In this document: positions 41,989-42,097 of the stretch, piece after piece
Position numbering within the stretch: position 1 is the first letter of the stretch
Layout: every line of letters starts with the position of its first letter
NCBI RefSeq assembly: GCF_006345805.1
Contig: NC_043011.1
Location: 41,676,464-41,740,463 of the forward strand
Reading direction: 5' to 3'
Origin: Octopus sinensis
Lineage: Eukaryota
DNA length: 64,000 nt
The notes under the pieces: model-generated
The model's database searches: none
The model's input: the letters and a program-made list of their open reading frames with translations, nothing else
Told to the model about the DNA's origin: nothing
Made by a program: the position numbers and the translations under genes

Positions 41989-42065
41989 CTGTTGACCTCG
42001 GCGAAATCAGCGGTCGCTCTCACGAATTCAACACGTCTTGTCTCTCCGCCGTCTTTGCTCGAACT
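41989..42065 (-). ncRNA. Candidate 77-nt non-coding first exon
   Basis: Starts at the Inr A (42065), contains no ATG, ends CAACAG|gtaagg, followed by a pyrimidine-rich intron; 11 CpG in 41991-42100. Confidence 0.6.
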
Positions 42066-42097
42066 GACCACACGTGCTTCCTGACCACACGTGCTTC
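42033..42097 (-). promoter_or_regulatory. Inr + DPE core promoter with two tandem CACGTG E-boxes
   Basis: TCAGTT (+1 = 42065), G at +24, AGACGT at +28..+33; 17-bp tandem unit GAAGCACGTGTGGTCAG at 42064-42097. Confidence 0.65.

What the first reader, a model, noticed from the sequence alone, without database searches (positions are those of the whole stretch)
41989..42097. Textbook Inr+DPE core promoter with a spliced non-coding first exon
Seen (minus strand): TCAGTT with A at 42065, G at +24 and AGACGT exactly at +28..+33, then CAG|gtaagg at +77 and a pyrimidine-rich intron. 11 CpGs in 110 bp stand out in CpG-poor unique DNA. Established: TCAKTY plus RGWYV at +28..+32 with strict spacing defines Drosophila DPE promoters, typical of developmental regulators and also of some LINE 5' ends. 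Inference: a real TSS using DPE logic in a mollusc, where I know of little functional DPE evidence. The downstream gene is not identifiable here.
Basis: partly seen in the sequence, partly recalled or inferred. Interest (0 to 1): 0.72.

Follow-up and report, generated by a model that had tools for sequence, protein, structure and literature searches.

The report
Candidate gene start site in octopus
A short, single-copy, CpG-rich stretch of octopus DNA carries a letter-perfect fly-style transcription start signal followed by a strong splice site, so it is probably a real but ordinary promoter, though neither its transcript nor its gene could be shown with the data available.

Summary

The loose Inr+DPE pattern is not significant on its own (6 in the window, 4.4 expected). 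The strict combination is rare: about 0.0008 expected per window, and 0.0055-0.076% of shuffles of the CpG cluster itself.

The cluster is the only one of five CpG clusters that is not a SINE copy. It has no second copy in 113 kb of Octopus DNA examined. It sits in uniformly CpG-depleted DNA (o/e about 0.2 on both sides).

New finding: a perfect 17-bp tandem duplication places two E-box plus ETS-like modules at -6..-35, and the Inr uses the end of the proximal copy.

The taxon is Octopus, confirmed through a LINE fragment.

No downstream coding exon, protein homologue, RNA family or transcript evidence could be obtained. The best reading is a real TATA-less Inr+DPE promoter of an unidentified, possibly non-coding or intragenic, transcript (about 0.5). 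Rivals are a low-copy TE or young insert, chance, and an internal exon. Interest is low to moderate.

The parts
42062..42067 (-). Initiator TCAGTT (Drosophila Inr TCAKTY, -2..+4); proposed +1 is the A at 42065
   Evidence: Read directly. The consensus is from PMC4581360, Table 1. TCAKTY alone occurs 258 times in the window.
42042..42042 (-). G at +24
   Evidence: None of the five other loose Inr+DPE matches in the window has G here.
42032..42038 (-). DPE AGACGTG at +28..+34. It matches RGWYV(T), DSWYVY and the original RGWCGTG. Positions +30..+33 (ACGT) also fit Bridge part II (WYGT).
   Evidence: RGWCGTG occurs only twice in the window on both strands.
41989..42065 (-). Proposed first exon: 77 nt, no ATG, 9 CpGs, purine-rich (A22 G26 C16 T13). 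One frame is open and the other two contain stops.
   Evidence: The RNA fold is unremarkable (z = -0.38). There is no Rfam match.
41983..41991 (-). 5' splice site CAG|GTAAGG (8 of 9 positions match MAG|GTRAGT)
   Evidence: It is one of only two CAGGTAAG sites in the window.
41929..41982 (-). Pyrimidine-rich start of the proposed intron (80% C/T over the first 60 nt), running into a CA-rich degenerate minisatellite (41700-41930)
42064..42097 (-). Perfect 17-bp tandem duplication (minus strand GAAGCACGTGTGGTCAG x2). Each unit carries an E-box CACGTG (42071-42076, 42088-42093) and, across the unit junctions, an ETS-like CAGGAAGC (42076-42083, 42093-42100). The last four bases of the proximal unit are the TCAG of the Inr.
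   Evidence: GGAAGCACGTG occurs nowhere else in the window. Assigning these motifs to transcription-factor classes rests on my own knowledge.
41989..42097 (.). CpG islet: 11 CpGs in 109 bp (o/e 1.4), confined to the exon plus the two E-boxes, inside unique DNA with o/e 0.21-0.26
42100..42270 (-). Single-copy, G-rich, CpG-free upstream region (-35..-205). It includes the palindromic GGGCATGCATGGGC (42100-42113) and two possible acceptors (AG at 42135-42136 and 42221-42222) that would make the exon internal.
41474..41672 (-). tRNA-like SINE copy inside the proposed intron; it bounds the unique segment on the downstream side
   Evidence: 80% identical to 21885-22073 and to other in-window copies.
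42270..42392 (-). Old, diverged SINE fragment bounding the unique segment on the upstream side; it contains the window's only other CAGGTAAGG (42369-42377)
   Evidence: Many weak matches of 25-50 bp at 78-84% identity to in-window SINE copies. The extent was judged by eye.

Best explanation
The site is a genuine TATA-less, focused RNA polymerase II core promoter of the Inr+DPE type in an Octopus genome.

Proposed mechanism:
1. TFIID contacts the Inr (TCAGTT, A+1 = 42065) and, at fixed spacing, the DPE (AGACGTG, +28..+34, helped by G+24).
2. Two duplicated proximal modules at -6..-35, each an E-box CACGTG plus an ETS-like GGAA site, recruit bHLH(-ZIP) and ETS-class activators.
3. Transcription starts at or next to 42065 on the minus strand.
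4. The 77-nt AUG-free leader is spliced from CAG|GTAAGG (41989) to an exon that is not recognisable in, or lies beyond, the 42 kb of downstream sequence.
5. The 11 retained CpGs mark a small patch protected from germline methylation inside a strongly CpG-depleted, probably gene-body-methylated, domain. The promoter would therefore most likely be an intragenic alternative or antisense promoter, possibly for a non-coding RNA.

Shown: the motifs, their spacing, their statistical rarity, single-copy status in the DNA examined, the CpG contrast and the taxon.

Inferred: TFIID and activator binding, the start site, splicing, the methylation state and the nature of the transcript.
For: - Exact Inr, G+24 and DPE at canonical spacing, with no TATA at -31..-24 (definitions in PMC4581360).
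- The strict combination is expected about 0.0008 times per window and appears in 0.0055-0.076% of shuffles of the CpG cluster itself.
- A near-consensus donor lies 77 nt downstream (P 0.4-2.9%), followed by an 80% pyrimidine tract. The exon has no AUG.
- Eleven CpGs are present where 1.8 are expected from the local background (P about 3e-6).
- This is the only one of five CpG clusters that is not a SINE copy.
- No second copy exists in the window or in L001-L003.
- No protein, Pfam or Rfam identity would give the segment another role.
- The perfect 17-bp duplication shifts the reading frame, so the region upstream of +2 is not coding.
- In octopus, one large class of genes with methylated bodies (pattern MP2) lacks methylation at the TSS and promoter (PMC9476566).
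- DPE-type promoters are reported by CAGE in another spiralian (PMC7854359).
Against: - There is no transcript, cap, chromatin or conservation evidence of any kind.
- No downstream exon was found. None of 718 ORFs of 40 aa or more on either strand has a credible Pfam hit, and two homology searches were empty.
- CpG depletion is the same on both sides of the site (0.21 versus 0.26).
- The + strand T>A skew does not switch at 42 kb. Neither result shows the signature expected of a long, germline-expressed minus-strand unit starting here. The rule linking skew to transcription is established in mammals, not in cephalopods.
- The CpG-rich patch is only about 110-170 bp and stops exactly at the exon borders, which also fits a young inserted fragment.
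- Four of the five CpG clusters in the window are transposon copies.
- The motif was picked post hoc by a reader scanning for many kinds of signal.
Confidence: 0.5

Rival explanations
1. The CpG-rich block is a young or low-copy mobile-element fragment that carries its own internal Inr+DPE promoter, for example the 5' end of a jockey-type LINE or a solo LTR. The CpGs survive because the insert is recent, not because the site is an active host promoter.
For: - All four other CpG clusters in the window are transposon (SINE) copies.
- Jockey-like LINEs exist in Octopus and a fragment lies in this window.
- From my own knowledge, Drosophila jockey-type LINEs use internal Inr+DPE promoters.
- CpG enrichment stops sharply at both ends of the 110-bp block.
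- The block is embedded between CA-rich minisatellite stretches on both sides, as an insertion would be.
Against: - No second copy in the 64-kb window or in 49 kb of other Octopus DNA, whereas the SINE families give 7-183 in-window hits.
- No ORF1, RT or any Pfam domain follows the site. The sequence runs instead into a splice donor, a pyrimidine tract and a minisatellite.
- No matching LTR partner or terminal repeat was seen within the window (one search covers 41000-43000; one search compared 41300-42800 with the whole window).
- LINE copies are usually 5'-truncated, so isolated 5' ends are rare (own knowledge).
- No ORF-level relatives in a collection that does contain Octopus TE-derived ORFs.
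Confidence: 0.2
2. The Inr, DPE and donor are a chance juxtaposition. The CpG-rich, E-box-bearing patch may be some other unmethylated regulatory element, or nothing, and no transcript starts at 42065.
For: - The loose Inr+DPE pattern is at chance frequency in the window (6 versus 4.4).
- The finding was selected after reading 64 kb for many kinds of signal.
- An Octopus genome (gigabase scale, own knowledge) would hold many chance matches of even the strict motif. Scaling the 0.0008-per-64-kb expectation gives tens genome-wide.
- No downstream gene was found.
- No compositional change occurs at the site.
Against: - The strict motif appears in only 0.0055-0.076% of shuffles even when the CpG-rich composition is granted.
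- The independent coincidence of a near-perfect donor at +77 has P 0.4-2.9%.
- The site also lacks a TATA box and any AUG, and E-box/ETS modules abut the Inr.
- The five other loose matches show none of these features.
Confidence: 0.2
3. The 77 nt are the 3' part of an internal exon, untranslated or coding, of a longer minus-strand transcript that starts further upstream. The exon would enter through an acceptor at 42135/42136 (exon 42134-41989) or 42221/42222 (exon 42220-41989).
For: - AG dinucleotides with some upstream pyrimidines exist at both places.
- One reading frame is open from 42143 to the donor and has the most protein-like amino-acid composition of all unique ORFs in the window.
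- A second CAGGTAAGG donor lies 386 bp upstream on the same strand, after an ATG-led 21-codon ORF.
Against: - The open frame has no homologue in an exhaustive search of 1.84 billion representatives. The single hit, P0013, is a tandem-repeat artefact. Pfam found nothing either.
- Its protein-like composition is what GC-rich DNA gives on translation.
- The perfect 17-bp duplication inside it shifts the frame.
- The 42135 acceptor has a purine-rich, poor tract.
- The upstream donor sits in an old SINE fragment.
- No frame is open across 42220-41989.
Confidence: 0.1

Closest known systems
Drosophila-type TATA-less Inr+DPE focused core promoters (TFIID-dependent; elements as tabulated in ElemeNT, PMC4581360)
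   Same: - Inr TCAKTY at -2..+4.
- DPE within DSWYVY/RGWYV(T)/RGWCGTG at exactly +28..+33(34).
- G at +24.
- No TATA box.
- A single Inr match in the region, suggesting focused initiation.
   Different: - The organism is a cephalopod, where no TSS maps were found in the searched literature.
- No MTE (6 of 12 positions) and no Bridge part I (read against PMC4581360).
- Function is untested.
- The element sits in a small CpG islet inside CpG-depleted DNA. That context does not exist in the unmethylated fly genome (own knowledge).
Internal promoters at the 5' ends of jockey-clade LINEs (Inr+DPE downstream of the start site)
   Same: The core-promoter grammar is the same. Jockey-like LINEs are present in Octopus and in this window.
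   Different: - No LINE body (ORF1, RT) follows.
- Single copy in 113 kb of Octopus DNA.
- A splice donor follows instead of a 5'UTR and ORF.
Unmethylated CpG-island-like promoters of genes with methylated bodies (octopus methylation pattern 'MP2', PMC9476566)
   Same: A local CpG-rich patch (o/e 1.4) sits at the putative TSS within DNA bearing the deamination signature (CpG o/e 0.2-0.3, TpG/CpA about 1.4).
   Different: - The patch is only about 110-170 bp. Over 301 bp the o/e is 0.57 and GC is 52%.
- Depletion is equal upstream and downstream, so the site is not at a gene-body boundary.
- Methylation itself was not measured.

Membership tests
Inr+DPE (Drosophila-type) Pol II core promoter | Initiator matching TCAKTY with A at +1 | tested here: met
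   TCAGTT at 42067-42062. The consensus is from PMC4581360, Table 1.
Inr+DPE (Drosophila-type) Pol II core promoter | DPE (DSWYVY / RGWYV) at exactly +28..+33 relative to the Inr A | tested here: met
   AGACGT at +28..+33, with G at +34 and G at +24. The strict combination is expected about 0.0008 times per window.
Inr+DPE (Drosophila-type) Pol II core promoter | Typically TATA-less | tested here: met
   Positions -31..-24 read AAGCACGT. There is no TATAWAAR (sequence).
Inr+DPE (Drosophila-type) Pol II core promoter | Capped transcripts actually initiate at the Inr A | not testable with these tools
   No transcript, CAGE or read data were reachable. Protein-collection and metagenome look-ups were empty.
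Inr+DPE (Drosophila-type) Pol II core promoter | Activity depends on the DPE and on the Inr-DPE spacing (TFIID binding) | not testable with these tools
   This needs in vitro transcription or reporter assays.
Spliced non-coding first exon | Consensus 5' splice site at the exon end and no start codon in the exon | tested here: met
   CAG|GTAAGG at 41991-41983; no ATG in 42065-41989.
Spliced non-coding first exon | Junction to a downstream exon observed; no acceptor used upstream | not testable with these tools
   No RNA data were available. Candidate upstream acceptors exist at 42135/6 and 42221/2. No downstream exon is recognisable.
CpG island (Gardiner-Garden and Frommer criteria, own knowledge: at least 200 bp, GC at least 50%, o/e at least 0.6) | Length of at least 200 bp at o/e of at least 0.6 | tested here: not met
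   109 bp at o/e 1.4. Over 301 bp (41900-42200) the o/e is 0.57 and GC is 51.8%. 'CpG islet' is the more accurate term.
Transposable-element terminus (LINE 5' end / LTR) | Multiple copies in the genome | tested here: inconclusive
   Single copy in the 64-kb window and absent from 49 kb of other Octopus DNA. A genome-wide count was not possible.
Transposable-element terminus (LINE 5' end / LTR) | Element body (ORF1/RT or internal region with a second LTR) adjacent | tested here: not met
   No Pfam domain in any minus-strand ORF downstream. No repeated partner was found in the window.
Known structured RNA gene (Rfam) or tRNA-derived element | Covariance-model or tRNA match | tested here: not met
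   No Rfam hit at gathering thresholds. In E-value mode only hits with E of 0.5 or more, none over the exon. ARAGORN found 0 genes.

The most novel reading that the evidence does not exclude
Cephalopods use the fly-type Inr/G+24/DPE grammar with strict spacing. Here it drives an unannotated spliced, probably non-coding, RNA from a tiny unmethylated CpG islet embedded in a germline-methylated gene body. That would make it an intragenic alternative or antisense promoter, activated through a recently duplicated E-box/ETS module that itself supplies the initiator.
Probability: 0.35. Interest if true: 0.4.

Novelty: new member of a known kind. Interest (0 to 1): 0.27.

Why it matters
If capped, spliced transcripts do start here, this would be a clean single-locus test case for two questions. 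The first is whether TFIID-DPE recognition with strict spacing, defined in Drosophila and seen statistically in an annelid (PMC7854359), operates in molluscs. The second is how small unmethylated promoters sit inside methylated octopus gene bodies.

On its own it is one more predicted promoter of a well-known type, with no identified gene, so its value is mainly for annotation. The duplicated E-box/ETS module that ends in the initiator is a neat small example of how a slippage duplication can build promoter-proximal architecture.

Tried and rejected
1. Gene hunt. I took all 718 stop-to-stop ORFs of 40 aa or more (entropy-filtered) on both strands, in six batches, against Pfam. Only chance-level hits appeared (best E 0.0011 among 115 queries).

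2. Exact look-up of six ORFs over the site in the 15-billion-protein collection: none present.

3. Word-indexed homology searches with chimeric queries. One used the seven ORFs over the site. The other used the 29 most protein-like unique ORFs plus the site ORFs. These negatives are therefore weak.

4. Exhaustive phmmer of the 52-aa frame that is open across the exon. The one hit, P0013, is an 11-fold tandem-repeat ORF, which I rejected as an artefact.

5. Exact-pattern scan of JGI metagenome contigs for E-box+Inr+G24+DPE: 0 matches, and uninformative.

6. Rfam (gathering and E-value modes), tRNA scan and RNA folding of the exon: nothing.

7. An attempt to reach the orthologous locus through the LINE fragment's best hit. 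L001 (O. vulgaris OX597841.1) turned out to be a paralogous TE copy, not the orthologue. L002 and L003 likewise served only as controls for composition and copy number.

8. SL-RNA gene, snRNA-type gene and tRNA-derived SINE head were considered and dropped. The site is single copy, there is no convincing Sm site or A/B boxes, and there is no Rfam or ARAGORN hit.

9. MTE and Bridge part I were checked by eye against PMC4581360 and do not match.

10. The apparent 15-of-19 similarity of the exon 3' end to a SINE at 57.7 kb is below BLAST noise.

Full report
**Observation**

On the minus strand the sequence reads ...caggaagcacgtgtggtcaggaagcacgtgtggTCAGTTcgagcaaagacggcggagaGacaAGACGTGttgaattcgtgagagcgaccgctgatttcgccgaggtcaaCAG|GTAAGGctcttttgtatttctttctccc.... 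Indexing by script gives:

| Feature | Position |
|---|---|
| Inr TCAGTT | 42067-42062, A(+1) = 42065 |
| G at +24 | 42042 |
| AGACGT at +28..+33 | 42038-42033, with G at +34 |
| Donor CAG\|GTAAGG | 41991-41983 |
| Exon | 77 nt, ending at 41989 |

The exon has no ATG. The first 60 intron bases are 80% pyrimidine. 41989-42097 holds 11 CpGs (o/e 1.4) against 0.31 for the window. The DPE also fits the ElemeNT functional set DSWYVY and the original RGWCGTG. The -31..-24 region has no TATA box. MTE and Bridge part I are not matched (definitions from PMC4581360).

**Is it more than chance?**

- The loose pattern TCAKTY-N23-RGWYV is not. It occurs 6 times in the window against 4.4 +/- 2.1 in Markov simulations. 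The five other matches have 0-1 CpG, no G+24 and no nearby donor.
- The strict pattern is. RGWCGTG occurs only twice in 128 kb of both strands, and about 0.0008 Inr+G24+RGWCGTG combinations are expected per window.
- Granting the local CpG-rich composition, only 0.076% (RGWYVT+G24) or 0.0055% (RGWCGTG+G24) of 200,000 dinucleotide shuffles of the 170-bp cluster carry the motif on either strand.
- Independently, CAGGTAAG occurs twice in the window. The chance of one within 270 nt downstream of a given point is 0.4%, or 2.9% for AGGTRAG.
- Eleven CpGs in 109 bp has P of about 3e-6 at the local unique-DNA o/e of 0.23.

A perfect 17-bp tandem duplication lies at 42064-42097 (minus strand GAAGCACGTGTGGTCAG x2). 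It puts two CACGTG E-boxes (42071-42076, 42088-42093) and two ETS-like CAGGAAGC sites (42076-42083, 42093-42100) at -6..-35. The TCAG of the Inr is the last four bases of the proximal unit. The distal unit's TCAG is followed by GA and has no DPE at +28. GGAAGCACGTG occurs nowhere else in the window. Because 17 is not a multiple of 3, the duplication also argues that the DNA upstream of +2 is not coding. All 11 CpGs lie in the exon (9) or the two E-boxes (2). There are none for about 300 bp on either side.

**Surroundings**

- The window is 38% GC, and about 52% of it matches other parts of the window or of other Octopus loci.
- The four other CpG clusters (36.8, 50.8, 53.8 and 57.7 kb) are all SINE copies with 7-183 in-window matches. 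The 41951-42120 cluster matches only itself.
- The unique segment (about 41930-42270) is bounded downstream by a CA-rich minisatellite and a tRNA-like SINE (41474-41672). Upstream it is bounded by an old SINE fragment (about 42270-42392).
- No tRNA or Rfam family is present in the window. A permissive Rfam scan of 41700-42400 gives only noise. The exon does not fold unusually (z = -0.38).

**Taxon**

A LINE fragment at 59044-59400(-) is 93% identical to an Octopus vulgaris 'hypothetical predicted protein'. It also hits a jockey-like reverse transcriptase of O. vulgaris. The window is therefore from Octopus (vulgaris or a close relative), confirming 'mollusc'. The best hit's locus (L001) shares only transposon pieces with the window, so it is not the orthologue.

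**Downstream gene**

None of 718 ORFs of 40 aa or more on either strand has a credible Pfam match. One used the ORFs over the site, and the other used the most protein-like unique ORFs of the window.

The one frame open across the exon (42143-41988) has the most protein-like composition in the window, which is what GC-rich DNA gives on translation. An exhaustive phmmer search returned only P0013, an 11-fold tandem-repeat artefact. The target exon and the nature of the transcript remain unknown. It may be non-coding, or its next exon may lie beyond the window.

**Copy number**

There is no second copy in the window or in 49 kb of other Octopus DNA (L001-L003). No LINE body or LTR partner is adjacent. 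This excludes a high-copy repeat but not a low-copy family. A genome-wide BLAST could not be run here.

**Context that tempers the promoter reading**

- Unique DNA is equally CpG-depleted downstream (o/e 0.21) and upstream (0.26) of the site, with TpG/CpA at about 1.3-1.4. Three other Octopus loci have o/e 0.51-0.86.
- In octopus, 5mC is reported to be confined largely to gene bodies and absent from most intergenic DNA and transposons, and one large class of body-methylated genes lacks methylation at the TSS and promoter (PMC9476566). By inference, the whole window probably lies inside a germline-methylated gene body.
- The site would then be an unmethylated islet within that body, that is, an alternative or antisense intragenic promoter, not a gene-body boundary.
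- The + strand T>A skew of unique DNA (-0.07 and -0.04) does not switch at the site. AGGTRAG is 13:1 in favour of the minus strand. Both could reflect + strand host transcription. These rules are not established for cephalopods, and I treat them as hints only.

**Mechanism and weights**

| Explanation | Weight |
|---|---|
| TATA-less Inr+DPE promoter recognised by TFIID, activated through the duplicated E-box/ETS modules, starting at about 42065 and splicing the 77-nt leader at 41989 | about 0.5 |
| Young or low-copy TE fragment with an internal promoter | about 0.2 |
| Chance motif in a CpG-rich patch of other or no function | about 0.2 |
| Internal exon entered at 42134 or 42220 | about 0.1 |

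**Novelty**

- From my own knowledge, DPE promoters are known from flies to humans.
- CAGE in the annelid Dimorphilus reports DPE and TATA promoters in Spiralia (PMC7854359).
- Individual mollusc promoter papers mention the DPE, but I did not read them.
- No cephalopod TSS or core-promoter study surfaced in the library.

This is therefore at most a new, unverified member of a known kind. It is useful for annotation and as a tidy test case, but not surprising.

Noticed in passing
window 1-64000 (compared with L001, L002, L003): The whole window is unusually CpG-depleted, with TpG/CpA excess of about 1.4. Overall o/e is 0.31, and unique DNA is 0.21-0.26 on both sides of the site. Three other Octopus loci have 0.51-0.86. 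Given published octopus methylomes (5mC confined to gene bodies), the window may lie inside a germline-methylated gene body.
   Followed up: partly
window, both strands: Two strand asymmetries. The donor-like heptamer AGGTRAG occurs 13 times on the minus strand and once on the plus strand. Unique DNA has T>A on the plus strand throughout (AT skew -0.04 to -0.07). Both may be a footprint of plus-strand host-gene transcription. The shorter sub-motifs GTAAG and GTGAG are symmetric.
   Followed up: partly
window 42369-42438 (-): The window's only other CAGGTAAGG (42377-42369) lies 386 bp upstream on the same strand. It is preceded by an ATG-led 21-codon ORF (MATKELPTLLVKIMDSLLEKS, ATG at 42438). 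It sits partly in an old SINE fragment and has no homologue.
   Followed up: partly
window 42447-42462 (-): A tandem TCATGTGA-TCATGTGA (two M-box-like E-boxes) lies about 385-400 bp upstream of the candidate start. With the two CACGTG boxes at the start, that makes four bHLH-ZIP-type sites in 400 bp.
   Followed up: no
window 42100-42113 (-): The palindromic GGGCATGCATGGGC lies immediately upstream of the duplicated 17-bp modules.
   Followed up: no
window 40680-40800, 41130-41270, 41700-41930, 42870-43650 (-): Degenerate CA-rich minisatellite-like blocks (units such as ACAGACACAACAGT and TTACAAACACTGTCA) flank the candidate promoter on both sides and are interrupted by SINE insertions. The roughly 950-bp segment between them could itself be an old insertion into the array.
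   Followed up: no
window 36829-36997, 50763-50878, 53786-53959, 57652-57852: All four other CpG-rich clusters are copies of SINE families (7, 183, 20 and 25 in-window BLAST hits). This agrees with reports that octopus transposons are CpG-dense and unmethylated.
   Followed up: yes
window 59044-59400 (-) and 7572-7931 (+): These are LINE C-terminal fragments. The first is 93% identical to an annotated Octopus vulgaris 'hypothetical predicted protein' and related to a jockey-like reverse transcriptase. It fixes the taxon as Octopus.
   Followed up: yes
window 11340-12370, 24560-25280, 46650-47400: A 100-N assembly gap (11340-11439) abuts about 900 bp of polypurine/polypyrimidine low-complexity sequence. 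Two 700-bp compound TG/TA microsatellites produce the longest (spurious) ORFs in the window.
   Followed up: no
L001 3804-4583, 8322-9182, 13694-14557: The unrelated O. vulgaris locus fetched as a control carries a cluster of single-exon C2H2 zinc-finger genes interspersed with the same SINE and LINE families.
   Followed up: no
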